Below are positions 7,452 to 63,478 of a stretch of 64,000 nt of DNA, piece by piece. Origin of the DNA: Octopus bimaculoides (lineage: Eukaryota). Every line of letters begins with the position of its first letter. The stretch's first letter is position 1. The position numbers and the translations under genes are program-made. Below the pieces are notes generated by a model. It had not been told where the DNA came from. It saw only the letters and a list, made by a program, of their open reading frames with translations, and made no database searches. Location: positions 100,026,478 through 100,090,477 of the forward strand of contig NC_068981.1 of the NCBI RefSeq assembly GCF_001194135.2, in the 5' to 3' direction.

Positions 7452-8282
7452 ATAAGTATCCAGGCTGTTGCTGTAGTAACAAAGCTAAAGCACACAGAGT
7501 GAAGCTGCTGGACACAGATTGACCTTGAACTCTGCTGTGCATGTGCACTAAGTTTTTATGTTCTAGCTCACTTCCACTGTTTACAGCAGTGCTCGAAAGG
7601 CAGGTGTGTACCATGTGATTGTCACATTGACCATGACAGAGAAAGTTGAAAAGAACATCTGCATCAAATTTTGCCAAAAGTTTGGCAATACCTGCTCAGA
7701 GGCCTCTGAAAAGAGATCTTGTGCAACTGAAAACCAAGTACCTTTTTTGTCAGCTGAAAGTAGTTTTGGTACAAAGTTGGCAGACAAGCATCTCATACCC
7801 AAATCTTCAGTGATAATGGTCTGAACTGAACCGTAACTAATCTGCATATCCTCTGATAACTCATGGATTATGATTCGATGATCTCCCCTCAGAGATACAT
7901 GCACATCTGCAATGTTTTCCTCATTTCTGCTGGTTGCAGGTCTCCCAGAATGTCTGTCAATATCAACATTTTTTTGGCCATCTTGGAAACGTCTGAACCA
8001 CTCGTACACTTGTGTATGGCTCATACACTCCTCTCCATACACTTTCTGCAACTTTGCATCAGCCTCTGAGCAGGTATTGCCATGACAACTTTCTCTGTCA
8101 TGGTCAATGCGATGATCACACACTACACACCTTTCTTTGAAGCACTGCTGTAAACAGTGGAAGTGAGCTAGAATGTTAAAACTTAGTGTGCATGCACAGC
8201 AGAGTTCAAGGTCAATCCGTACCAAGCGACTTCACTCTGTGTACTTTAGCTTCGTTACTATGGCAACAGCCTGGATACTTAT
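7452..8282 (-). mobile_element. mariner-derived fold-back element (5' end duplicated as an inverted arm)
   Basis: Arms 7452-7702 and 8062-8282 are reverse complements. The centre encodes mariner HTH-region peptide (QVYEWFRRFQDG...HSGRPATS...GMRCLSANFVPKLL) on the minus strand. No catalytic domain. Confidence 0.9.
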
Positions 8283-16038: not shown

Positions 16039-16192
16039 NNNNNNNNNNNNNNNNNNNNNNNNNNNNNNNNNNNNNNNNNNNNNNNNNNNNNNNNNNNNNN
16101 NNNNNNNNNNNNNNNNNNNNNNNNNNNNNNNNNNNNNNNNNNNNNNNNNNNNNNNNNNNNNNNNNNNNNNNNNNNNNNNNNNNNNNNNNNNN
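16039..16192. other. assembly gap
   Basis: N run. Confidence 1.
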
Positions 16193-16842
16193 TATATAAT
16201 ATAAATAATATATAAACATATGCATATATCCATACATATATGTACATATCTACATCTATATGTATACATACATGCATATATGGGTACAGGATATCACAAA
16301 AAAACGTTAAACACAATGAGAAACAAAAACATAAAGACGAAAATGGAAAACGAACTTTTTTTGAACAAAGAAAATAAACATAAAGAGTATAATCCTTCGT
16401 CAGTTGTCCCTGTTCCACCTACTGTGCATTTTGAAGGCAAGGACAATATGCGACTTTGTTGGAACAGTCCTTCCCGAAAGCAAATTAAATAAAATTTGGA
16501 ATTTTTTGTGTAGGACAGTGAAAACAAGACAGTAAAAAACAGTAAGAACAGGACAGTGAGAACAAGACAGGCTTAACAGCCCTCACTGTTTGTTTTACTG
16601 TCTTGTTCTCACTGTCCTGCTCTCTGTTTTTCGTCGTTCAAAAAAAGTTCGTTTTCTGTTATTGTCTTTATGTTTTCATTTCTCATTGTGTTTAACGATT
16701 TTTTGTGATGTCCTGTACCCATATATGCATGTATGTATACATATAGATGTAGATATGTACATATATGTATGGATATATGCATATGTTTATATATTATTTA
16801 TATTATTATATGATCAAACACCATGCATCCTTTCCCAAGTAA

Positions 16843-16847
<5 letters not shown>
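16193..16847. mobile_element. unclassified repeat family in head-to-head inverted configuration, carrying an HHR-like module
   Basis: 16193-16368 is the near-identical reverse complement of about 16630-16805. The same family occurs as direct repeats at 31185-32095. Confidence 0.85.
16392..16453 (-). ncRNA. rearranged hammerhead-like motif, probably inactive copy
   Basis: Minus strand GCATA-TTGTCCTTG-CCTTC-AAAATGC...CAGGGACAA-CTGACGA-AGG. The expected GAAA reads AAAA. Confidence 0.55.
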
Positions 16848-16899
<52 letters not shown>

Positions 16900-20689: not shown

Positions 20690-21070
20690 TGTGTGGTTAA
20701 GAAGTTTGCTTCTCAATAACATGGTTTCAGGTTCAGTCCCACTGCATGGCACCTTGAGCAAGTGCCTTCTACTATAACCCCAGGCCAACCAAAGCCTTGT
20801 AAGCAGATTTGGTAGATGGAAACTGAAAAAGGTCCATTATATATATGTGTATGTGTTTCTTTCTTTGTATTTGTGTCTGTCCCCCATAGCTTGACAACTG
20901 ATGTTGGTGTGTTTACATACATATAACTTAGCAGTTCAGCAAATAAAATTGACAGAATAAGTACCAGACTTATTAAAAATAAGTAATGGGGCCAATTTGC
21001 TCGACTAAAACTTTTTAAGGTGGTACCCCAACATGGCTACAGTCTAATAACTGAAACAAGTAAAAGATAA
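20690..21070 (+). mobile_element. SINE family B, near full length
   Basis: gtgtggttaagaagtttgc...caggttcagtcccactgcatggcaccttgagcaagtg...ataactgaaacaagtaaaagataa. Confidence 0.9.
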
Positions 21071-26539: not shown

Positions 26540-27595
26540 TGCCCTCATCTGCACTTCTGCTGTGAAATTGGTTCATCTGGGACACTTGACAGTAATAGGT
26601 ATAGTTTTGCTTTGAAGACACCTAAATCCACCCCATATAGGTCTCTCAAGTCCTTCTGGAGGATAATGAAAAGCAGTGGGCCTTTAAAGCCCAGGCTGTT
26701 GCAATATCCTGTCCTATATCTTGAGTCTTTGGCACTATGCAGTGGCACCCTGTTCTAACATTAGTGTAACTCTCAATGCCAAAGTTTGGGACAAGTCCCT
26801 CTAGGATCTTCCAGATGTACATTATGGTATATCTTTCCCACCTATGCTCAAAGGAATAGAGTCTCAATCTCTTGAGTCTTTCCCAGTAGCTTATATGCTG
26901 CACAAAGGTTATCTTCTTCGTGTAGCTTCGTTGGATTGCCTCAAGTTCTGCAATTAATTTTACACTGGTCGGTGACCATAGCTGAGGGCAATAGTCAAAA
27001 TGGCTGAGGACAAGTGTCCTCCAGAGGACTATCATAGTTTCCTGATCACTTGTTCTAAAAGTTCTACGAATTCATCTGGTCAACCGTCTGCATTTCATTG
27101 CCAACTTAGCAACATGCACATGGAAGGATGCATCATACTCATGTAAATGCCCAGGTTTCGCACTAACTGTGTCTCTAGGATTGCAATTCCTCCACATCCA
27201 GTGTATTTAATTGGTGCTGCATTTAGTTTTGCATGCTGATAGCACAAGACTTGAAACTTTTCAGCATTAAACTGCATACTATTCTTTTCAGCCCACTTGT
27301 ATATTTCATCCAACTCACATTGTAGGTGCATAGTGTCTTCAGAGTTCTGTATCACCTGTGAAATTTCTGTATCATCTGCATAACTTGTGATCATGACTGT
27401 GTGGCTGAGAGCATGTCTGAGAGGGCCATTATGAACAGTAATGGTCCCAAAACAGTGCCTTACAGAACACCGCTCACTATTTGCGTGTCATTGGAGGTGG
27501 TCTCATTGGCAACTACCACCTGATTTCTATCCTTCAGAAAGTCATGCAGCCATTCTCCCAATTTCCCAACTATGCCAAGACCACAGTTTGTGCAT
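26540..27595 (-). pseudogene. CR1/L2-like LINE reverse transcriptase 3' region
   Basis: GTVLGPLLFIM-like segment, ITSYADDTEI, LVLSHFDYCPQLWSP, SYWERLKRLRLYS..RWERY. Frameshifted and truncated at a gap. Confidence 0.9.
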
Positions 27596-30034: not shown

Positions 30035-30385
30035 TCTTTTACTTGTTTCCATCATTGGACTACAACCATACTGGGGCACTAGCTTGAGGGGTTTAATTGA
30101 AGAATTCATCCTCATTACTTATATTATTCAAGTTTGGTTACTTATTCTATCAGTCTCTTTTTAATGAAATACTAAGTTACGGGGTATGTAAACAAACCTA
30201 CACCAGCTGTCAAAGCAATGGAAGGAGACAAAACACACACACTTAAGATGGGATTCTTTCAGTTTCCCTCTACCAAATCCTTTCACATGGCTTTGCTCAA
30301 CCTAGGGCTTTAGTAGAAGTTACTTTTCCAAGGTGCCATGCAGTGGGACTGAACTTGAAATCATGTGGTTGGGAAGCAAACTGCT
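30035..30385 (-). mobile_element. SINE family B
   Basis: Reverse complement of ttgcttcccaaccacatg...agtcccactgcatggcacc through the tgaaacaagtaaaag tail. Confidence 0.85.
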
Positions 30386-30898
30386 CAATACACAATCTTG
30401 CCTACAATACATACATACATAAAAAAGGCATATGAAATAATATGATTCTCATCCATTTTTTTTTAATGGAATTAAATGTATGTGTGTGGATTAGCATTGA
30501 CCTAGAATCATAAAGAAGTTACAAAACAATATTATTAGATTACGATTGCAGCCCTAGCATTTCAAAATTACATATATATATTAATAGTGAATTAATATAT
30601 ATTGCAACTAAACCTCAATACTACTAAATACAAATCACAAAATAGCATGGTAGTAACAAACATCAATATTTTCATTAAATATTCATTATATATCCGTTCA
30701 CCAATTAAAAAAATTATGTTTACATCACTTTAAAATATATAAACGAACAGCAGAATTGTAAACTGAAAATTGGAGATAAAATCTATAATTTAATATTAAT
30801 GAACTTGTCTACAATTTGGCACCTTTCAATGCTCAATGAAAATTTATGATTACCAGACTAAAAGAAATAAATACCGGTATGTGTATGAATGAACATTT

Positions 30899-30899
<1 letters not shown>

Positions 30900-30933
<34 letters not shown>

Positions 30934-30998
30934 TTGTGTGTATGTATATGTGTGTGTATGTGTGTATTTGTGTGTGTGTGTATATATATATATATATG

Positions 30999-31046
<48 letters not shown>
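30900..31046. repeat. compound (TG)n/(TA)n microsatellite
   Basis: Directly visible. Confidence 0.95.
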
Positions 31047-31051
<5 letters not shown>

Positions 31052-31184
31052 TAGATTCAAGGTGAATATGGTACTTAAGTTTAGGCACCAGAATTAAGTA
31101 CGGTAATGTTCACAATGCTTAAGTAAATGGAGTCGCATGAAACGATCATACTGCATTAACTTTGGATATCCTTGTTGCTTATTA

Positions 31185-32095
31185 TGTTTTCGTTTCTAAT
31201 TGTGTTTAACGTTTTCTTGTGATGTCCTGTACCCATATATGCATGTATGTATACATATAGATGTAGATATGTACATATATGCATGGATATATGCATATAT
31301 TTATATATTATTTATATTATTATATGATCGAACGCCACGCATCCTTTTCCAAGTAAGTTTTATCTTAATAATTTACTATGCGCACTCTACTACTATTACT
31401 TCGCTGTCTATCTCTCTCCCTCTCTTGTTCTTCCTCCTTTCTGTTTTTCTCTCCCACCCTTTCCCTATTCTTCTCTTCCTTTCACCGTTCCCTCTCTCTC
31501 TCTTCCTCCTTGACCCTCTCTTCCTCCTTGACCCTCTCGTCACTGACACGTGATGAAAGGGATTCTTTCTTTCTATTCGCTGCCTTCCTATAGAGAAGAC
31601 GTGAATTTTCTGTCTCTCATTCACGTCCAACTAGTGTTCAAAATAATTTTTCTATTGTCTTGGCCTAACAGCCCTTACCGTTTCTTTTCACTGTCCTGTT
31701 TTCACTGTCTTGTCTTGTTTTTACTGTCTTGTTCTCACTGTCCTGTCCTTGTTAACACTTTCACACTCCGCAAAAAATTCCAAATTTTATTTAATTTGCT
31801 TTGCGGGAAGGACTGTTCCAACGAAGTTGTGTATTGTCCTTGTCTTCGAAACACGGAGTAGATGGACAGGGACAACTGATGAAGGAGAATATTCTTTATG
31901 TTGCATGTCTCGTTTCTCTGTTTGTTTTTTTCGTTGTTCGAAAAAATGTTCGCTTTATGTTTTCGTTTCTCATTGTGTTTAACGTTTTTTTTTGTGATGT
32001 CCTGTACCCATATATGCATGTATGTATACATATATATGTAGGTATGTACATATATGTATGGATACATGCATATATTCATATATTATTTATATTAT
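31185..32095 (+). mobile_element. unclassified HHR-bearing repeat, direct repeat with 773-bp spacing (Penelope pLTR/retrozyme-like by inference)
   Basis: tgtgtttaacg...gatgtcctgtacccatatatgcatgtatgtatac occurs at 31201 and 31974. Between them lie a CT-rich tract, a hairpin, cactgtc sub-repeats and the HHR-like module. Confidence 0.75.
31827..31888 (+). ncRNA. non-circularly permuted hammerhead ribozyme candidate, intact core
   Basis: TTGTGTA|TTGTCCTTG-TCTTC-GAAACACGG-agtagatgga-CAGGGACAA-CTGATGA-A-GGAGA. All three stems can be paired by hand. Confidence 0.65.
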
Positions 32096-32110
32096 ATATA
32101 TACATAGAGA

Positions 32111-32146
<36 letters not shown>

Positions 32147-35100
32147 TAGAGAGAGAGAGAAAGAGAGAGATACATACATGCATGTACACACATTTACAAT
32201 TAAAAAGACAAAAACAGAATCCAAGGAAGAGAAAAAGAGAATGAGAGAGATTGAGAAGAACAGCAGCTAATATTCATACATAAATGCACGCACACATATT
32301 TATGTCTATATACCTTGACATATTGACATACACACACACACACACACATTGTCATACATATGCACAAAATACAGTGTGTATGTGTATACTTAAGTATACT
32401 TACATTTTCAAATGCATGAAGATATACCTGTATTTAATGTCGCCTAACATACAGAATTAAATAAGATAAAAATAAAAAGATCATAATTTCAAATCCTTTT
32501 CACAATCACTTAAAAACAGGAATTAAAATATTCAAGTTAAAGTATTTGCATGAATAATATTTGAAACATGCTACAATGCAAACTGATATTTAAAGCGTGG
32601 CTACATTTTATATGTTATTTAGATTCCATTGTTATGTGTCATGCATATGTTTCTGTTGAACCCAGTAACCAATTTACTTTGAATTTGAAAATGAAGCCAA
32701 CTTTTTCTGCTAATGCCCCAAAGGAAGGCATGAATATTAAACAATCTCTAACTTTTCACAATAAAATCATGATCATGTTTAAGAAATATTTTGTAGCATT
32801 GAAATCATTTTTATCTTCACCCATTGTTTTGTAGCAAGTATCTTATGGAAGGCAGCTACCACCTAATTTTAATATATTTACTTTCAAGATTTTTTCTGTT
32901 ATGTTTGTTATTCAATTATATATTGCTAAAACATATACAATTTGCACAGGGAACTCATCATGGTAAACTGCTGTTTTGGAATGTAACAGTTTTGAGAACC
33001 AAATCAAATATCTATCTTTGATTCAATGATAGCAAATTAGTAGAAATAGCAAAACATTCAGCAAAGCAGCTTACAGTATTCTATTTTATCCTTCCTGGGG
33101 TCAATTTCACCTTACAATGCTCTAAGATCAATACAATAAGATTTAGTAATATATTGGAATTGACCCAATGAATTGTATTACCTATTCAAAAATAAATATT
33201 CCATTGAGGCATCAAGACTGCATTTAGAAAAAAAAACCCTTTTTAATTTTTTGTAATCCTCTTTGAGAATATGGACATATAGGTTTGCCTTGATTTATGA
33301 TACATGAGGATTTAAAAAAGTCTTAACTAGTACAAGTTCTCTAGATCATTAAATTGCACCAATGAGCAGAAACCTTGCAGAGAGAGCAAAGGGAAATCAC
33401 TCAAATGTATTCACAACTGCATAGTTACATGAACAGAAACTTTTTAATAGTGTCATAAGGGTTTATTACATTATAAGTCATTACTTAATTACCACCACTT
33501 AATATCAGAGTCCAAGGGACATATGCAGCATATAGTTCAGGTTTTATCAAAGAATGGTGACAGGTGTGATTTATTTACAAATTAAGGAACTAGAAGTCAC
33601 TATATAAGAAATATATCCACTGACCTATGCAACCAGAAATTGATTTTTGCCACAACCAGTCACTACATAATGACTTGTTTTGTTTGGATTCATACAAGAT
33701 AACAAATCTAAGATAGTGGTCGTAGGATTGCTTTAAGGTATAGTTCATAAGTCATGCTTGGCCACAATAATGAAATGTTGATGTTGCAAAGATCAACATT
33801 AATTTCATTTCAATAAAGTAGTGAGGACATTTTATTTCATTTAATTCAATCAAACAATTTAGCTATATAACAAATAGTACAAAATTGTACTGGTTTGTAC
33901 TATTTTTACCATTCATTATGTAGCTAAATTTTTGGATTGAATTAAATGAAATCAAATGTCCTTGGCCTATCATCACTAATTGTTTGCCTTTCCTCACTAC
34001 TTTAACCTATACCTACTGATTCAAAGGGAAACCACCATTAACTGCTTTTGAACAAACATTCACACAACCACAACTTCAACTGCTGTTCTAACTGGAATTT
34101 TGATGGCACACAAAACACATTTGAGCACTCAGACCTAAACTCCTCATATATTCTATGATGTATGATGTATTAAAATCATAAATAGTTCCCATATTAGTTC
34201 AGTAGACCACTGTGGTACAGGTTTCTTGCAAAGTTCAACTCCAAATAAACTGATTTAGCGTTCATCCTTTCAGGATGAATAAGCACCAGTATTATACTAA
34301 CATCATTGTACTGAATAACTTTAATTGATTCCATCCTTCTGCTACCCAAAATCTGACTAAAAACACTGAGAGAAATTCTTACTTTCAATTTTCTATCTGA
34401 GTATAATAGACAGAATGAGAAATTTTCATATGAACTGTTCAAAAGATTTTTATAGTAGCTGAATGACCTTTTTAATGCTTATCACTTAATCAGGAAGCCA
34501 AATTTATATCAACTTTTAATGAGGAAAATTGAAGTAACCAAGTAGCTAAAATGCAAAATGACCAAGATACAATTTAAACACATGACTATTCAGTTGATTG
34601 TCAACACTTTATCTTCACAGCTAGTCAGTTTATAATCTCTTTATAAACTCATTACACATTATAAGCTTATCTCATCAAAATGTTCTAACTACTTATGCGT
34701 ATTAGTATGTAATACAACTTGAAATTACAGAATACATTCACTGACACTATATAAAATTATTTGAATGAGAAAATGATACAGCTGATTGCTTATGAAATTA
34801 ATCTTTCACTTAAGTTTTCACATTTTTATGGAAGCAAAAAATGTACCTCAGGGATGTACATGTTTTTTTTATATTAACTAATAGCAATGTATGTGAAGTG
34901 AAATAAGTGCAGTTCAGTGGGTTGCATATTCAGTTAGTACATGACATTACTTTCTACTATGTATGAAGCTAACAATTTCATTATTTTAGCCTTATGGTAG
35001 TAGAGGCAGACTGAGGGCTGTTAATCAAAGGCATTGAAGCCATGACTATCGTATTTTTAGTATCTCAGGGTCTGTACTGCTCAATATATCCTTTATTAAA

Positions 35101-36834: not shown

Positions 36835-37159
36835 GGGAATACTCATTCAGTGAAACTGTAAACTAATCATTTGATAAGACAAGATGATGATACTTCACTT
36901 AGAATACCTACTGTAGTAGAACAAAAGACTAATGAGGTGTTTGTAAGTTTATAAAAAATTCTACAGAGCATCTAGTTCACTAAATGACTGTTGCTTCTAA
37001 GAAGAGTACATGTGCCTTATAACATATCTCATTGTTCACTACTGTAGAGTGATTGGCAGACATCTCCAGTTATACCAGCCAAGATATTCAAACTTTAACC
37101 ATTCACTCACTACAATGCAAAAAATACATCAAAATGTTTTTATTTTCTTTCCAAAATTG

Positions 37160-37915
37160 TTGGACATAAGAAGCATCAGATGTGGTGTGCAAGAGAGACA
37201 ACTTCACTGGTATGGTCATGTGCTGTGTATGGTTGAAGAGAGCTGTGTGAAGAAATGTCACCCCCTAATAGTTGAAGGAACCTGTGGAAGAGAGAGACCC
37301 AGGAAGACATGGGTTGAGGTGGTGAAGCATGACCTTCAAACGTTGGACTTCACAGAGGCAATGACAAGAGACCAAGGCCTCTGGAGATATGCTGTGATTG
37401 AGAAGACCCGGCAAGTAAAGTGAGATCACAGCCATAGCCTATACTAGTGTCGCATAACCAGCCCATTTAAAAAGTACCTGTGAATCGTCAGGCGACACAC
37501 CATGCTTGAGGAGACCAATTGAGTCAAATAAAATCAAAAACAAAAATGGCAATTGTAGTTGTGGCTGATGCCAATGCCACCTGACTGGCTCACATGTTGG
37601 TGGCATGCAATAAGCACCATTTATGCATGGGTCATTGCCAGAGCCACCTGACTGGTTCCCCATGCTGGTGGCACATAAAAAGCACCATCCAAATGAGGCT
37701 GATGCAGTGCCGCCTGAGTGGCTCCTGTGCCAGTGGCATGTAAAAAACACCCACTACACTCTCGGAGTGGTTGGTGTTAGGAAGGGCATCTAGCTGTAGA
37801 AACATTGCCAGATCAGATTGGAGCCTGGTGTGGCCTCCTGGCTTGCCAGTCCCCAGTCAAACTATCCAACCCATGCCAGCATGGAAAATGGACGTTAAAC
37901 GATGATGATGATGAA
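37160..37915 (+). mobile_element. RTE LINE 3' end (ORF C-terminus, 3' UTR and (GAT)n tail)
   Basis: QERQLHWYGHVLCM...GTCGRERPRKTWVEVVKHDL, then a repetitive UTR ending ggacgttaaacgatgatgatg. Confidence 0.9.
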
Positions 37916-38221
37916 TATAGTTATTGTGCTGCATCAAATCAGTTTTTATCAATAACATTACTTATTTCCTCATAATTTCAGACAGATTGCCTATAGCTAC
38001 CATGGTAAATGTCTATTATCTCGTTTACTAAGTAATTTCAGTACTTCATCAAGTCAGTTATTGATAGCTTTACCAATACATTACTTATTGACCAAAATGA
38101 CAGATTAAGTTGATTCTGATTGATTTTTGCTTGTTATTAAAAATTTGAACAACTATCAATCATCTTTTTTACCACACACACAAATTTTATTCAGTTTTTT
38201 GTCTTTTCAGATATTATCAAG

Positions 38222-38605
38222 GTTGTGTAGTTAAGAAGCTTGCTTCCTGACCATATGGTTTTGGATTCAGTCCAACTACATGGCACCTTGGGCAAGTGTC
38301 TTCTACTATAGTCCCAGGGTGACCAAAGCCTTATAAGTGAATTTGACAGACAGAAACTGAAAGAAGCCCACCGTGAGTGTGCATGTGTGTGTGTGTTTAT
38401 GTATACCCTTGTCTTAACATCAAGTGATGGTTATGAACAAGCAGCTTTGTCATACAAATGATGTTGTTTGGTTCCAGTTTTCTTTGGCCATGGGGAAATA
38501 TTACCTTGCTTGGAAACAGGTGAAGGTTGTCAATAGCAAGCACATCCAACCATAGAAAATCTGCCTCAGTAAATTCTGTCTTACCCATGAAAGCACGAAT
38601 AAGTG
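38222..38605 (+). mobile_element. SINE family B variant
   Basis: gtgtagttaagaagcttgcttcc...ggcaccttgggcaagtgtcttctactatag...ggaaatattaccttgcttggaaacagg. Confidence 0.85.
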
Positions 38606-38700: not shown

Positions 38701-39546
38701 TATCATCATTTAATGTTCATTTTCCACGCTAGCATGGGTTGGATGGTTTGACCAGGACTGGCAAGCTGGAAGGCTGCAGCAGATTCCAGTCTGATTTGAC
38801 ATGATTTCTACAGCTGGATGCTCTTCTTAATGCCAACAACTCAGAGTGTAATGGGTGTTTTTATGTACCACAACTGCAATTTTACTTAGCTTGGCAGGTC
38901 TTCTTCTCAAGCACGACATAATGCCAAAGGTTTTGGTCATTTGTCATTGCCTCTGTGAGGCGCAACACTCAAGAGGTGCTTTTCACATGCCACCAGCATC
39001 AGCTACTTTGCCTACGTGAGGCCCAACACTTGAAAGGAGCTTTTTACGTGCTACCAGCATGAGTACCATTTACGTGACACCAGCATTAGCCATGACTATG
39101 ATTTCACTTGGCCTGACAGGTTTTCTCAAGCACAGCATATCACCAAAGGATCTTGGTCACCAGTTATTGACTCTGTGAGGCCCAAAGTTCAAAGATCATG
39201 CTTCACCACCTTGTCCTATGAATTTCTGGGTTTACCTCTACCACAAATTCCCTCAACAGTTAGAGATCGGCACTTCTTTACACAGCTGTCCTCATCCATA
39301 CACATCACATGACCTTACCACTGTAGTCATCTCTCTTTGATACCTCTCGTGCCCAACTTTTCTCTCAAGATGCTTATACTCTATGAAACATGCACAGATA
39401 TTGCACATCAAGCGAAGCATACCAGCTTCATTTCTTTCAAGCCAATGCATATCCTCGGCTGTCACAGCCCATGTTTCACTGCCATGTAGCATAGCTGTTT
39501 GCACACAGGCATCATACAATCTGCTTTTCACTCTGAAGGAAAGGGA

Positions 39547-39548
<2 letters not shown>
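38701..39548 (-). mobile_element. RTE LINE 3' fragment
   Basis: RVKSRLYDACVQTAMLHGSETWAVTAEDMHWLERNE on the minus strand. The 3' UTR and tail are reverse-complementary to 37160-37915. Confidence 0.9.
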
Positions 39549-39592
<44 letters not shown>

Positions 39593-39607
39593 GATGCAGC
39601 ACAGAAT

Positions 39608-39658
39608 TTTGTCAGTGAACAGGTCGCGGTCTCAAAGCGACGAAAATATCTTGACAAA
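39608..39658 (+). ncRNA. hammerhead-like motif with G3-C8 swapped core
   Basis: TTTGTCA-GTGAACA-G-GTCGC-ggtctcaaa-GCGAC-GAAA-ATATCT-TGACAAA. Confidence 0.55.
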
Positions 39659-52290: not shown

Positions 52291-54964
52291 CCAGTTCACC
52301 TCTTCCAAGTTTATTCATTAAAATTACAAATTATAGTTCGTATATTATTTTATTTTAGCCTTTAAATTTATTCTGAGTAATACTCATTTGATATTCTTAA
52401 CTGATTTTTGTCTTTTATTCTTAAGTCTCTTCTCATACAGCTCATTTATTCCACAATATTTATAGACTTATTCTTGGTATAATTCCTTTATTTTTGTGTC
52501 ATTATCTAACCATATATCACATGTCTTTGAAGTCTTCCTCTTTTTAGAGTGACCTTTGCACATTTTTCCACTCCATTTTCTTATAAATATCACTTCTAAA
52601 TTCCTGAACCATTTGCAAATAAGTCTTCACTCGTTTGTTGTTATCTTTTTGAATAAATCTTTAAATCATCTATATATAAAAGATGATTTATTACCATCCC
52701 ATAACATTTGTGTCCATAGCCAATTTGGTTTATTATAATGGTCAGCAGAGTTTCAGCTAAGCAAAAGAGGAGTGAGATAAAATGTTCTTGTATTATTGTT
52801 GTTGTTGTTATTATTATTGATTTCTTTATTTACCTATGAATGCAGAGATATATTGAATTTTCCAATTCTATATTACAAAGAGGCACAGAAAGGTGTATAC
52901 AAAGGAAAAAATATTATTTGAAAGAATAAATGCTCTTGAAATATTTACTGGCATTAGTATTGTTATTTTCAAAATCTTGAATATGTTTATAGTTATAATT
53001 AACTTGGCATGAATATGTTTCATTCTAGGTGTCCCAGTGAAAAAAAAAAAAGAATTCTCTGATGATTTAATTAAAGAAATTTAATTAGAAGCAACACATG
53101 TATAATTTAAAAGTTAATTAAGTATAATTTCTTATATTTTCAAAATATTTCCATATAGCATTGTAGCATATTAGTATTACTTTAACAATTATGAAAACAA
53201 GATTACTATTTGTAAAATTACACTGGATTTCTTATATACAAGCTATAATCAGTCTAAAATCTTAAGTTATATAGAATTTTTTGATTATCATTTCCCAAAA
53301 TAAAAATACCAATAACACAGTCCAATATTTTAAGAATGTCGCAAAAGACTATATAATCAAATTAGTCAGTTTCCTAATGACTCAGGTCCTATAGTGTAAA
53401 ACCTCAAGTGCTGTTGTATCTTTATATATTCATCATTGATCCACAGCTGGATGAAAGCTTATTTATGTTGGTTGTAGGCCTAGCTGTCCATGTAGACCAA
53501 TTGCTGGTCAAATTGAGTGCTCCAGTGGCCAGGTGGTTAATCCAAGCCACTGGTGCCTAAAACCTGTACTTAACCTCCATGAGTTCTATAATTACTTTCT
53601 ATGTTTACCAGAGCATGTTTTTGGTAGTATTTAACAAGTAAGTTTTGAATTTGTGTAGCAATTACAATTATTTCCATCACCATTATATCTACAGGAATTT
53701 TCTGTATTCCATTAGCTAAAAATATTCTGTATCTGTAACTATCAGTCATATGTTGATATCTACCCAGATAAGTTATGCTTTGAGGTGTTCTTGTTTGTTT
53801 CTTCTGCTTTTATTTTTGTAGCTGTATGAATTAATCTGAGTTTATACAACATTTCCTAATTTATGTATGTTGGTAAATCAACGCACAAACTATTGAGATT
53901 TGATGCAGATGGTTTCCAGCAATATAAATTAATGCAAAGTTGACTGAAAAGCAACAGAAATAAACCCAAACCTAGGAGACTATTTAATAACAATATTAGT
54001 AATACATGGGATCTGTAAAAGTTTCAGATCAACTGTAACTGGAAGAGAATATCTTAAAATCTTGGAAAAATGGCAGAGAGAAATCTGATAAAAAAAGGAA
54101 ATTTCATGCATGTAAACATATTTAAACATATTTGAGCCATACTGTGATAATGTTTCTAAGACCTAGCTCAAGGCAATGAATAACCGTAGGTTTAGTAAAC
54201 ATAGTAAAGTTATTTTGATTAAATGGAAACAGATCTGCCATGGCATGGTTGAAGTCATATGCTCTCTCATGTTGACATAATAAAGTATACTAGTTTTCTG
54301 TAGGAAGAGAGACAGCATGAACTCAGTATATAAAACCAACAGATACACAAGAGATGCAGTGAGATTGCTAGCTGGTTGAAAGGGAATAAAGTCTTTGTGT
54401 GTACATCAGATATACACATGTAGTTAGCTGTAAGGGATCTATAAAATAAAGTCCAAATACTATTCAAATATGCTGCTAAAAGGAGAGTTGTAGATATATA
54501 CTTATATCAAAAATTATTTAACTTTCTATATGTTGTATAGTTTTTTTGGTTTTGCTTTTTTTTAATTTCAAAAATTTTGTATATTGTTGTGAATGTAAAC
54601 ATTAGAAATAGTATTGGTTGCAGACTTATCTTACAGCTGTAAATATGTAAGTAATTATAGAACATAGGAATTATAGTTTACACTGCTCCATGCTGTTAAA
54701 CAGACAATACTTTAGAGTGAATAAGATTTAAAGATGTAAATCATTTTCTAAGATCTAACACTATATTTTTGTGCAATTTTTCTTTCTCAGATGTACCTCA
54801 CACTATTAGATGCAATCTTCCTGCCAAACTTACATAAAGAATGCACCTGCCTGAAACTTTAGAATTTACATTTCTATTTGTGAATTTTTTCTAAGTGCAG
54901 ATCATCACCACTAGATTCTTGAGATTCAGGGTTACTTTGAAGTAAGGTAAGTTTACAAAAACAA

Positions 54965-55297
54965 GGCGTAGCTGCATGGTAAGAAGCTTGCTTCCCAACC
55001 ACATGGTTCCAGGTTCAGTCCCACTGCATACCACCTTGGGGAGGTGTCTTCTACTATAGCCTCAGACTGACCAAAGCCTCATGAGTGGATCTGGTAGATG
55101 GAAACTAAAAAAAACCCATCATATATGTGTGTGTATGTGTGTTTGTCTCCCTATTACCACTTGGTTCAGCAAAATGGGTCGATAGAATAAATACTGGGCT
55201 TAAGAAATAAATCCTGGGGTTGGTTTCTTTGACTAAAACCCTTCGAGGTGGTGCTCCAGCATGGCCACAGTCAAATGACTGAAACAAGTAAAAGAGT
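54965..55297 (+). mobile_element. SINE family B
   Basis: gcatggtaagaagcttgcttcccaaccacatggttccaggttcagtccc...aatgactgaaacaagtaaaaga. Confidence 0.9.
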
Positions 55298-61000: not shown

Positions 61001-61332
61001 TTTTACTTGTAGAACTTCAGCCAAACAAGTCAACCCCAGTACTTAGCTTTTCAAAGCTGGGTACTTATTCTATTGGTCTCTTTTGCCAAATTGCTAATTT
61101 ATGGGGATGTAAATGCACCAACACCAGTTGTCAAGCAGTGGTGGGGGACAGACTCAAAGACACACATACACACACACACACACATTGGACTTCTTTCAGT
61201 TTCTATCTACTAAATCCACTCACAAGTCTTTGGTCAGCCCGAGGCTATAGTAGAAGACACCAAAGTTTTATGCAGTGAGACTGAATCCAGAACCATGTGG
61301 CTGGGAAGCAAACTTCTTACCACACAGCCACT
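61000..61332 (-). mobile_element. SINE family B
   Basis: Reverse complement of gtggctgtgtggtaagaagtttgcttcccagccacatggttctggattcagtc. Confidence 0.85.
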
Positions 61333-62129: not shown

Positions 62130-63478
62130 ACCAAGGTGGTGAAATTTGTCAAGATCTTTTTTCGGTTTCAGGTGGTAAGGCTATGCTGCAGAGATTTGCA
62201 TCTTCCAGTCCCAGCTGCAGTAGCCTTTCATGAAGTAACTGCAACAACAATGTCGAAGGAGTTGATACTGAGCGGCGCATTGTATCCTTCACTAAGGCTC
62301 AGTGCCAGGCCTATGAACACATTGCTGCAGCCATCAATGGTGATGAAAGACAGAGTAGATTCTTCTTCCTCGATGGCTCTGGAAGTACAGGAAAGACTTA
62401 CCTGTACAATACATTGATATCTTCACTGAGAAGGCAAAACAAGCGTGCCCTTTCCTTTACTACTACAGGCATAGCTGCTGATTTGCTTATTGATGGAAGG
62501 ACTGTTCACAGTAGACTCAAGCTACCCATCCCATTGCATGAGAATCCCTTCAGAGTCATTTGAAAAATTAAAGCAGGCTCACCTTTTAATTATTGATGAA
62601 GCATCAATGTTATCATGCTATGTTCTGAGAGCCATTGATCTGCTACTTAGGCAAATAATGAATCCACCCAGACCATTCAGTGGAAAAGTGCAGCTACTTG
62701 GCTGAGACTTCAAACAAACTGCACCTGGCACCCCACAAGGGTCCGATGCAGCAGTAACTGAGTCCTCAATTAAGCAATCTATTCTCTGGCATTTCGTAAC
62801 AAAACTTGAGGCAGTTGAAAGAGTGTCATCAACAATCATTTTGACTCGTAATAACAAAGATCGTCTTCATATAAACACAGACATAATGTCATTATTGCCT
62901 GGTGAGGCAACGATATGCAGAAGCATTGACACCATAGTTGAAGAAAATAGCGAAACTGTTCGCATTATCCAGTGGAGTTTTTAAATTCACTGACGCTTTC
63001 TGGGATGCCACCTCATATACTGACCTTGAAGAGGCATTCAATAGTCATGTTGCTAAGGAACCTGACCCCAATGAGAGGTTTACTCAATGGGACTCGAATC
63101 TTAGTGCTGTCCATCAAGGATCTTTTCATTCATGGAAAAATACTTAATAGAAGTAAGAAAGGAGAGGAGGCCTTTATTCCATGCATCAACTTCCATCCCA
63201 GCGAGAGAACCCTTCCCTTTAGTATGAGTAGACAACAGTTTCCTGTTATCCCAGTATTTGCAATGATCATAAACAAATCACAAGACCAGAGCTTCAATAA
63301 TGTTGGTATCATCCTACCATCACCAGCATTCAGCCATGGACAACTTTATGTTGTATTGGGTAGAAGTAGAAGTTGCAATAATATTAAAATATTGGTAAAG
63401 GACCATCCAAAACAAGGTGAACTCATTGCTGATCAGGTTTTCACTAGGAACATGGCGTTGAAGCAATTACTGAGATAA
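62130..63478 (+). pseudogene. Helitron RepHel C-terminal PIF1-family helicase remnant
   Basis: FLDGSGSTGKTYLYN (Walker A), GIAADLLIDGRTVHS, LLIIDEASM (Walker B), G*DFKQ, VMLLRNL..GLLNGTR, AMIINKSQDQS, FSHGQLYVVLGR. Frameshifts and stops. 62972-63478 is still open. Confidence 0.92.

What the first reader, a model, noticed from the sequence alone, without database searches (positions are those of the whole stretch)
31827..31888. Hammerhead ribozyme candidate with non-circularly permuted strand order
Seen: all conserved hammerhead elements lie within 62 nt: CTGATGA (31876-82), GAAA (31848-51) and a GUA cleavage triplet (31831-33). Three helices pair by hand. Stem I is TTGTCCTTG (31834-42) with CAGGGACAA (31867-75), 9 bp with one G.U. 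Stem II is GGAGA (31884-88) with TCTTC (31843-47), 5 bp after one extra A. Stem III is ACACGG (31851-56) with TTGTGT (31827-32). The strand order is [III'-GUA-I][II'-GAAA-III][I'-CUGAUGA-II]. Established: types I, II and III are circular permutations of the opposite order, so this cannot be drawn as a nested fold and standard HHR searches would miss it. Inference: it needs a pseudoknotted or multimeric fold. The zero-length link from stem I to stem II is plausible because the distal ends of stems I and II lie close in the active hammerhead. From memory, natural non-circular HHR permutations have been reported, so whether this family is new must be checked.
Basis: partly seen in the sequence, partly recalled or inferred. 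Interest (0 to 1): 0.92.

Follow-up and report, generated by a model that had tools for sequence, protein, structure and literature searches.

The report
Chance hammerhead-like motif in octopus repeat
A 62-base stretch in an octopus-like repeat carries every hammerhead ribozyme element in the rearranged "type SGC" order published in 2023, but the second copy and the fold energies point to a chance look-alike, not a working ribozyme.

Summary
The block order (cleavage site, then GAAA, then CUGAUGA) is the type-SGC hammerhead of Eckert et al. 2023 (PMC10085705), so the topology is known and experimentally validated, not new.

A match this good is expected about 0.0013 times per 64-kb window, by 3000 shuffles and by 719 decoy cores on the real sequence. 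That is rare for one window and expected dozens of times in a Gb-sized genome.

The motif lies in an interspersed repeat of a CpG-poor, octopus-like genome. The only other copy (16391-16453, minus strand) has G12 changed to A and two stem II pairs broken. The motif is less conserved between copies (78%) than the 58 nt just upstream (95%).

The two "compensatory" stem III changes are what neutral CpG decay of an ancestral CGCG/CGCG palindrome would produce. The fourth helix that published type-SGC ribozymes have (shown essential in SGC-3) is absent. A competing nested fold (-26.4 kcal/mol) is far more stable than the three hammerhead helices (about -14 summed).

No further copies could be fetched. 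My verdict is probably a chance motif. I put about 0.1 on a real or ancestrally active type-SGC ribozyme, which would be the first one encoded in an animal genome.

The parts
31827..31833 (+). Block S, first part: stem III 3' strand TTGTGT (31827-32), with the G16.2-U16.1-A17 triplet at 31831-33. The predicted cleavage is 3' of A31833.
   Evidence: pairing counted
31834..31842 (+). Block S, second part: stem I 5' strand TTGTCCTTG. It is identical in both copies.
31843..31856 (+). Block G: stem II 3' strand TCTTC (31843-47), GAAA (31848-51), and stem III 5' strand ACACGG (31851-56). C31847-G31848 is a CpG, and copy B has CA there, which gives G12A.
31857..31866 (+). 10-nt connector AGTAGATGGA between blocks G and C. 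Published type-SGC ribozymes have one strand of a fourth helix here; no partner was found downstream.
   Evidence: best duplex -7.4 kcal/mol; 36% of shuffles are as good
31867..31888 (+). Block C: stem I 3' strand CAGGGACAA (31867-75), CTGATGA (31876-82), extra A (31883), and stem II 5' strand GGAGA (31884-88).
16391..16453 (-). Second copy of the motif. Stem I is identical and the core reads CTGACGA (N7 changed). GAAA has become AAAA (G12A), stem II is reduced to 3 bp and stem III to 4 bp.
31711..32101 (+). Long-form interspersed repeat that carries the motif. It runs: CACTGTCCTG-type tandem motif, 58-nt conserved block (31769-31826), motif, variable part, then segment X with a microsatellite tail.
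16193..16569 (-). Second long-form repeat copy, 82% identical to the first. It is cut off by the assembly gap at 16039-16192.
16570..16849 (+). Short form of the repeat, lying head-to-head with the long form. It lacks the 58-nt block and the motif.

Best explanation
The 62-nt stretch is a chance constellation of hammerhead elements. They fall in the type-SGC order inside a neutrally decaying interspersed repeat of a CpG-depleted octopus-like genome. It is not a ribozyme maintained by selection.

Stem I comes from an inverted copy of the repeat's own TGTCC-type motif. Stem III comes from a CpG-rich palindrome, ancestrally TCGCGT/ACGCGG, as inferred from the TG/CA/CG states of the two copies. 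The core words CUGAYGA and GAAA happen to abut these stems.

An RNA made from copy A would mostly adopt a competing nested fold. It might still show slow hammerhead-type cleavage in vitro, as lone hammerhead-like sequences can, but that would not show a biological role.
For: 1. Chance level. A match this good is expected 0.0013 times per 64-kb window. That means tens of matches in a Gb-sized genome, so one instance carries little weight.

2. The other copy. Only one other copy is in the window.
- It has G12 changed to A. G12 is taken to be essential on textbook knowledge, not tested here.
- The two distal stem II pairs are broken.

3. Conservation. The motif is 77.8% identical between copies, against 94.8% for the 58 nt just upstream and 93.8% for segment X.

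4. CpG decay explains most differences.
- Eight of the 13 substitutions in the motif are CpG versus TG/CA states, in a genome with CpG o/e 0.19.
- This includes both double changes in stem III.
- For two paired CpGs, 3 of the 4 neutral decay outcomes keep pairing, and one stem III pair did break in copy B. The apparent covariation therefore needs no selection.
- Formal counts with two sequences carry no power: 246 of 500 shuffles do as well.

5. Missing fourth helix.
- Published type-SGC ribozymes have a 7-bp fourth helix. It runs between the G/C connector and the 3' tail.
- It is essential in SGC-3, as shown by mutants M8/M9.
- No such helix exists here in either copy.

6. Energetics. The minimum-energy fold of 31815-31900 is a nested fold at -26.4 kcal/mol. 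It sequesters the stem III 3' strand, C3-U4, U7-A9 and stem II. The three hammerhead helices evaluated alone give -9.5, -2.0 and -2.1 kcal/mol.

7. Context.
- There is one motif per locus, with no tandem or flanking second ribozyme.
- The predicted cleavage site is about 120 nt inside the repeat unit.
- A short form of the repeat lacks the region altogether.

8. Known distribution. All published type-SGC examples come from metatranscriptomes (RNA), although all of RefSeq was also pattern-searched.
Against: - The match is good. The core, cleavage triplet, A15.1-U16.1 and G10.1-C11.1 are all intact, with 20 stem pairs. It is the top hit in the window by a wide margin.
- Read with the three distal stem I pairs open, the layout copies validated SGC-1 and SGC-3: stem I of 6 bp, a 3-nt linker, stem II of 5 bp, and one extra nucleotide between A9 and G10.1. 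Those two sequences were reconstructed from the paper's oligos.
- The inferred CpG-restored ancestor has a stronger stem III, with four G-C pairs (-5.6 kcal/mol), and an intact core.
- The one core difference outside G12 falls on the free position N7.
- Copy B keeps stem III better than it keeps the competing nested fold.
- A decayed daughter copy does not show that a master copy was inactive.
Confidence: 0.82

Rival explanations
1. It is a genuine type-SGC hammerhead, active now or in the ancestral master copy, carried by an octopus interspersed repeat. Stems I and II are tied together by the direct S-to-G junction, and the RNA cleaves 3' of A31833. Copy B would then be a dead copy that lost G12 by CpG deamination.
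For: - The core and all three stems are complete, with E about 0.0013 per window.
- The block order and layout match validated type-SGC ribozymes, including the extra nucleotide after A9.
- The CpG-restored ancestor has an intact core and a G-C-rich stem III.
- The G12A change in copy B lies at a CpG mutational hotspot.
- Classical hammerheads are common in metazoan repeats (background knowledge).
Against: - There is no fourth helix.
- A competing fold is much more stable.
- There is no sign of purifying selection on the motif relative to its flanks.
- The covariation is explained by CpG decay.
- Each locus has a single motif, with the cleavage site inside the repeat unit.
- No type-SGC example is known from any DNA genome.
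- Only two copies are available.
Confidence: 0.1
2. The region is a structured RNA of another kind: the nested fold with the outer stem AGUUGU/ACAACU, the inner hairpin CUUCG/CGGAG and the 3' hairpin AUGAAGGA/UUCUUUAU. The hammerhead words are incidental.
For: The minimum-energy fold of copy A is -26.4 kcal/mol, z = -2.9 against shuffles.
Against: - The outer stem and inner hairpin are both broken in copy B, whose fold is ordinary (z = -0.46).
- No Rfam family matches even at E up to 10.
Confidence: 0.03

Closest known systems
Type-SGC hammerhead ribozymes (HRIMA-1 motif and type-SGC variants; Eckert, Friedrich, Weinberg & Weinberg, NAR 2023, PMC10085705)
   Same: - The same non-circular block order: cleavage site, then GAAA, then CUGANGA.
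- One strand of stem I runs straight into one strand of stem II.
- Stem II is 5 bp.
- There is one extra nucleotide between A9 and G10.1 (U in SGC-1 and SGC-3, A here).
- Stem III closes over the S-G junction, so the core is doubly pseudoknotted.
   Different: - The published ones have a stem I of 5-6 bp plus a linker of 2-3 nt. Here it is 9 bp and 0 nt as drawn.
- They have a 7-bp fourth helix, essential in SGC-3 and absent here.
- They are supported by hundreds of sequences, R-scape covariation and cleavage assays. Here there are two copies, one of them with G12A.
- They come from soil, spruce and sludge metatranscriptomes, often opposite a hairpin ribozyme, and so are presumed circular RNA replicons. 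This one sits in an interspersed repeat of an animal DNA genome.
GCS-1, the single type-GCS candidate from Caballeronia peredens (same paper)
   Same: It is a lone pattern match in a DNA genome with all the expected hammerhead elements in a non-circular order, with no covariation support and no biological rationale.
   Different: GCS-1 was tested and cleaved partially in vitro, and its authors still call its biological significance unclear. The present candidate is untested and has a different block order.
Classical type I hammerheads of metazoan repeats: Schistosoma Sm-alpha SINE-like elements, newt satellite 2, retrozymes, Penelope-like elements (from background knowledge)
   Same: A hammerhead-type core embedded in a dispersed repeat family of an invertebrate genome.
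   Different: - Those are nested type I folds that Rfam models detect.
- They occur in tandem or paired copies, so unit-length RNAs can be excised.
- Their cores are conserved over many copies.
- None of this is seen here.
CChMVd (+) hammerhead with an extra A between A9 and G10.1 (De la Pena & Flores 2001; from memory, not checked here)
   Same: A one-nucleotide insertion (A) between A9 and the G10.1-C11.1 pair is compatible with activity.
   Different: That is a type III viroid hammerhead with a normal nested topology.

Membership tests
Hammerhead ribozyme (catalytic core) | C3-U4-G5-A6-N7-G8-A9 directly 3' of stem I | tested here: met
   CTGATGA at 31876-82 follows A31875 (N2.1). Copy B has CTGACGA, so only N7 differs.
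Hammerhead ribozyme (catalytic core) | G12-A13-A14 followed by the A15.1-U16.1 pair | tested here: inconclusive
   Copy A has GAAA at 31848-51, with A31851 paired to T31832. Copy B has AAAA (G12A), an inactivating change by textbook knowledge.
Hammerhead ribozyme (catalytic core) | Cleavage site N-U-H directly 5' of stem I | tested here: met
   GUA at 31831-33 in copy A and AUA in copy B.
Hammerhead ribozyme (catalytic core) | Three helices anchored at the core, with G10.1-C11.1 closing stem II | tested here: inconclusive
   Copy A has stems I/II/III of 9/5/6 bp with four G.U pairs, and G31884-C31847 pair after a 1-nt insertion. In copy B the stems are 9/3/4 bp. Stems II and III are weak, at -2.0 and -2.1 kcal/mol.
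Hammerhead ribozyme (catalytic core) | Core and stems conserved or covarying across homologues beyond the neutral expectation | tested here: not met
   Only two copies are available. The motif is 77.8% identical against 94.8% for the upstream flank. The two double changes are explained by CpG decay, and 246 of 500 shuffles reach the same covariation score.
Hammerhead ribozyme (catalytic core) | Site-specific, Mg2+-dependent self-cleavage | not testable with these tools
   This needs in vitro transcription and cleavage assays.
Hammerhead ribozyme (catalytic core) | The active fold is thermodynamically accessible | tested here: not met
   The nested minimum-energy fold is -26.4 kcal/mol and sequesters core and stem strands. 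The hammerhead helices sum to about -14 kcal/mol. Pseudoknot energies are only approximated.
Type-SGC hammerhead (Eckert et al. 2023) | Block order S, then G, then C | tested here: met
   S is 31827-42, G is 31843-56 and C is 31867-88.
Type-SGC hammerhead (Eckert et al. 2023) | Stem I (5-6 bp) joined to stem II by a short linker, typically 3 nt | tested here: inconclusive
   As drawn it is 9 bp and 0 nt. It becomes 6 bp plus a TTG linker if pairs 31840-42/31867-69 open, which then matches SGC-1 and SGC-3.
Type-SGC hammerhead (Eckert et al. 2023) | Fourth helix between the G-C connector and the sequence 3' of block C (the stem I/II interaction), required for cleavage in SGC-3 | tested here: not met
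   The best duplex is -7.4 kcal/mol in copy A (36% of shuffles are as good) and -4.6 kcal/mol in copy B (83%). The requirement is described.
Type-SGC hammerhead (Eckert et al. 2023) | Found in RNA (metatranscriptome) contigs, often with a hairpin ribozyme on the opposite strand | tested here: not met
   The window is an animal (octopus-like) DNA assembly. No ribozyme family was found on either strand.
Rfam hammerhead families (types I, II, III, HH9, HH10) | Match to a covariance model | tested here: not met
   There was no hammerhead hit at gathering score over the window, nor at E up to 10 over 30500-33000. This is expected for a non-circular permutation, so it says little.

The most novel reading that the evidence does not exclude
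The octopus repeat family carries, or carried in its master copy, a functional type-SGC hammerhead. That would be the first non-circularly permuted ribozyme encoded in a DNA genome and in an animal, working without the fourth helix of the environmental examples.
Probability: 0.1. Interest if true: 0.7.

Novelty: not a real feature. Interest (0 to 1): 0.22.

Why it matters
If it were real, non-circularly permuted hammerheads would extend from uncultured RNA replicons to an animal genome and a mobile element. It would also show that the fourth helix is dispensable. That would bear on how easily hammerheads arise and on how ribozyme searches should be designed.

As it stands, the case is mainly a caution in two ways:
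- Allowing all six block orders, G.U pairs and a one-nucleotide insertion yields a 'complete' hammerhead about once per 700 windows of 64 kb.
- In a CpG-depleted genome, paired CpGs produce changes that look compensatory without any selection.

Tried and rejected
Attempts to find more copies of the repeat:
- An exact-pattern scan of metagenome contigs with the conserved flank CGGGAAGGACTGTTCCAAC gave one unrelated GC-rich match.
- A scan of prokaryotic genome contigs with ACAGGGACAACTGANGAAGG gave one unrelated match in a Solibacteraceae coding region.
- A scan of viral contigs with the 25-nt flank gave nothing.
- A protein search with the 114-aa minus-strand ORF across the element, hoping for spurious ORF calls in other copies, gave nothing.
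- A protein search with an RTE-like ORF, meant to reach more octopus loci, gave a single hit on a short contig.
- The window's own Pif1 fragment is not on record.
- The one O. sinensis locus I could fetch (20.7 kb, L002) shares other repeats with the window but has no copy of this element.
- nhmmer with a two-copy profile found no further diverged copies in the window.

Other checks that gave nothing:
- No tRNA-like origin was detected by ARAGORN.
- There was no Rfam match except microsatellite hairpins that resemble mir-297/466 below threshold.
- The published type-SGC alignments are held only as images, so I could not build a covariance model of that family.

Rejected idea: treating the two double changes in stem III as evidence of selection. 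Both are CpG-decay products.

Full report
**What is there**

In hammerhead numbering:
- T31832 is U16.1 and A31833 is H17.
- T31834-A31875 is the N1.1-N2.1 pair.
- C31876-A31882 is C3-A9, and A31883 is an inserted base.
- G31884-C31847 is the G10.1-C11.1 pair.
- G31848-A31850 is G12-A14, and A31851-T31832 is the A15.1-U16.1 pair.

Stem III has 6 pairs, the two distal ones G.U.

**Is it more than chance?**

It allows any of the six block orders, stems anchored at the core with G.U allowed, 0 or 1 extra base after A9, and a total span of at most 150 nt.
- In the real window the candidate is the top hit, with 20 stem pairs. The next best hit has 12.
- In 3000 dinucleotide-preserving shuffles, the expected number of hits with at least 20 pairs is 0.0013 per window, counting both strands.
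- A second null keeps the real sequence, with its repeats and low complexity, and swaps the core words for composition-matched decoys. One of 719 decoys reaches 20.

The motif is therefore unusual for one window. At this rate, tens of equally good chance matches are expected in a genome of a few Gb, so one occurrence is weak evidence.

**What the topology is**

The order S-G-C is exactly the 'type SGC' hammerhead of Eckert et al. 2023 (PMC10085705).
- That work defines blocks S, G and C and reports 583 type-SGC sequences with R-scape covariation.
- It shows cleavage at the predicted site for five of them.

I reconstructed SGC-1 and SGC-3 from the paper's oligonucleotide table. Both have this layout:
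- stem I of 5-6 bp;
- a 2-3 nt linker;
- stem II of 5 bp;
- a bulged U between A9 and G10.1;
- a 7-bp fourth helix formed by the G-to-C connector and the sequence 3' of block C.

If the three distal stem I pairs of the candidate open, it has the same layout: 6 bp, TTG, 5 bp and an extra A. It has no fourth helix, though. The best duplex between 31857-69 and the 40 nt after 31888 is no better than shuffled sequence, in either copy.

All published rearranged hammerheads come from metatranscriptomes, although the authors also pattern-searched all of RefSeq.

**Context**

The window is 32% G+C, with assembly gaps, microsatellites and transposon relics.
- A Pif1/Helitron fragment has its best named relatives in Octopus bimaculoides (76% identity) and O. 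sinensis (74%).
- A 20.7-kb O. sinensis locus shares several short repeat families with the window.
- CpG is strongly depleted, with o/e 0.19 and TpG and CpA at 1.3.

The motif lies in an interspersed repeat, 31711-32101. Its parts, in order, are:
- a CACTGTCCTG-type tandem motif;
- a 58-nt block;
- the motif;
- a variable stretch;
- a segment X with a microsatellite tail.

A second long-form copy lies at 16569-16193 on the minus strand (82% identical) and is truncated by a gap. It sits head-to-head with a short form that lacks the 58-nt block and the motif. Segment X also occurs alone.

There is one motif per locus, and the predicted cleavage site is about 120 nt inside the repeat unit. That does not resemble the tandem or paired arrangement through which hammerheads of animal repeats release unit-length RNAs (background knowledge).

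**The second copy**

Across the 62 nt, the copies differ at 13 bases plus one indel, which is 77.8% identity. The 58 nt just upstream are 94.8% identical and segment X is 93.8%.
- Stem I is invariant, so it says nothing either way.
- The core differs at N7 (U to C), which is allowed, and at G12 (G to A), which by textbook knowledge abolishes catalysis.
- The two distal stem II pairs are broken, and so are the two distal stem III pairs.
- Two stem III pairs change on both sides, C-G to U-A and A-U to G-C.

These double changes look like covariation, but eight of the 13 substitutions are CpG versus TG/CA states. Both stem III pairs are among them.
- The two copies are what results if an ancestral TCGCGT/ACGCGG decays at its CpGs.
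- For two paired CpGs, three of the four decay combinations keep pairing (two Watson-Crick, one double wobble).
- One decay in copy B (G31855 to A) did break a pair.

The pattern needs no selection. G12 itself is the G of a CpG, and copy B carries the decay product.

**Energetics**

RNA 31815-31900 has a nested minimum-energy fold of -26.4 kcal/mol (z = -2.9). It pairs AGUUGU with ACAACU, UUGUCC with GGACAG in a shifted stem I register, and AUGAAGGA with UUCUUUAU. That fold occupies the stem III 3' strand, C3-U4, U7-A9 and stem II.

The three hammerhead helices evaluated alone give -9.5, -2.0 and -2.1 kcal/mol. This is only an approximation for a pseudoknot, but the gap is large.

The nested fold is not conserved in copy B, so it is not a rival functional structure either.

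**Verdict**

Against a ribozyme:
- One of the two copies has lost the core.
- The motif shows no excess conservation.
- The covariation has a neutral explanation.
- The fourth helix is missing.
- A competing fold is much more stable.
- The genomic arrangement gives cleavage no obvious role.
- The chance rate is too high for a genome-scale scan.

For a ribozyme:
- The match is of high quality.
- The layout is close to SGC-1 and SGC-3.
- The inferred ancestor is intact and has a stronger stem III.

I put about 0.82 on a chance look-alike, which might even cleave weakly in vitro. I put about 0.1 on a real or once-real type-SGC hammerhead, and a few percent on anything else.

More copies from octopod genomes would settle it. 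I could not obtain them with the collections available.

Noticed in passing
window 31769-31826 (and 16454-16510, minus strand): A 58-nt A/T-rich block just upstream of the motif (CAAAAAATTCCAAATTTTATTTAATTTGCTTTGCGGGAAGGACTGTTCCAAC...). It is 94.8% identical between the two long-form copies, far better conserved than the motif itself. Its function is unknown.
   Followed up: partly
window 31182-31363, 31955-32101, 16668-16849 (+) and 16193-16334 (-): Segment 'X', about 145-180 nt and ending in an ATGTATAT-type microsatellite, occurs four times at 93-95% identity, both attached to the long-form repeat and alone. Its AT/GT hairpins give sub-threshold Rfam hits to mir-297, mir-466 and similar (51 bits at most, against gathering scores of 85-90).
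   Followed up: partly
window 16193-16849: A palindromic arrangement. The long-form repeat on the minus strand sits head-to-head with a short form on the plus strand, and the short form has a clean deletion of the 58-nt block plus the motif. The assembly gap at 16039-16192 truncates the left arm.
   Followed up: partly
window 20690-20856, 30233-30400, 38218-38398, 54964-55148, 61158-61332; L002 17223-17393 and 17954-18120: A SINE-like repeat family of about 165 nt is present at least five times in the window at 77-81% identity. It also occurs twice, inverted, in the O. sinensis locus.
   Followed up: no
window 7581-8225 (-), 62972-63478 (+), 37010-37423 (+), 39292-39657 (-), 26646-27035 (-): Transposon protein relics. 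There is a Mos1-type HTH_48 domain and a Pif1 2B domain (Helitron-like helicase), whose closest named relatives are in Octopus. Three more ORFs look like non-LTR reverse-transcriptase tails by eye but have no Pfam hit.
   Followed up: partly
whole window: Strong CpG depletion (o/e 0.19) with an excess of TpG and CpA (1.3). There are seven runs of N (assembly gaps) and abundant (AT)n, (AG)n and (TG)n microsatellites.
   Followed up: yes
window 31498-31538: A perfect 18-nt tandem repeat, CTCTCTTCCTCCTTGACC, in 2.3 copies, lying between the upstream X copy and the long-form repeat.
   Followed up: no
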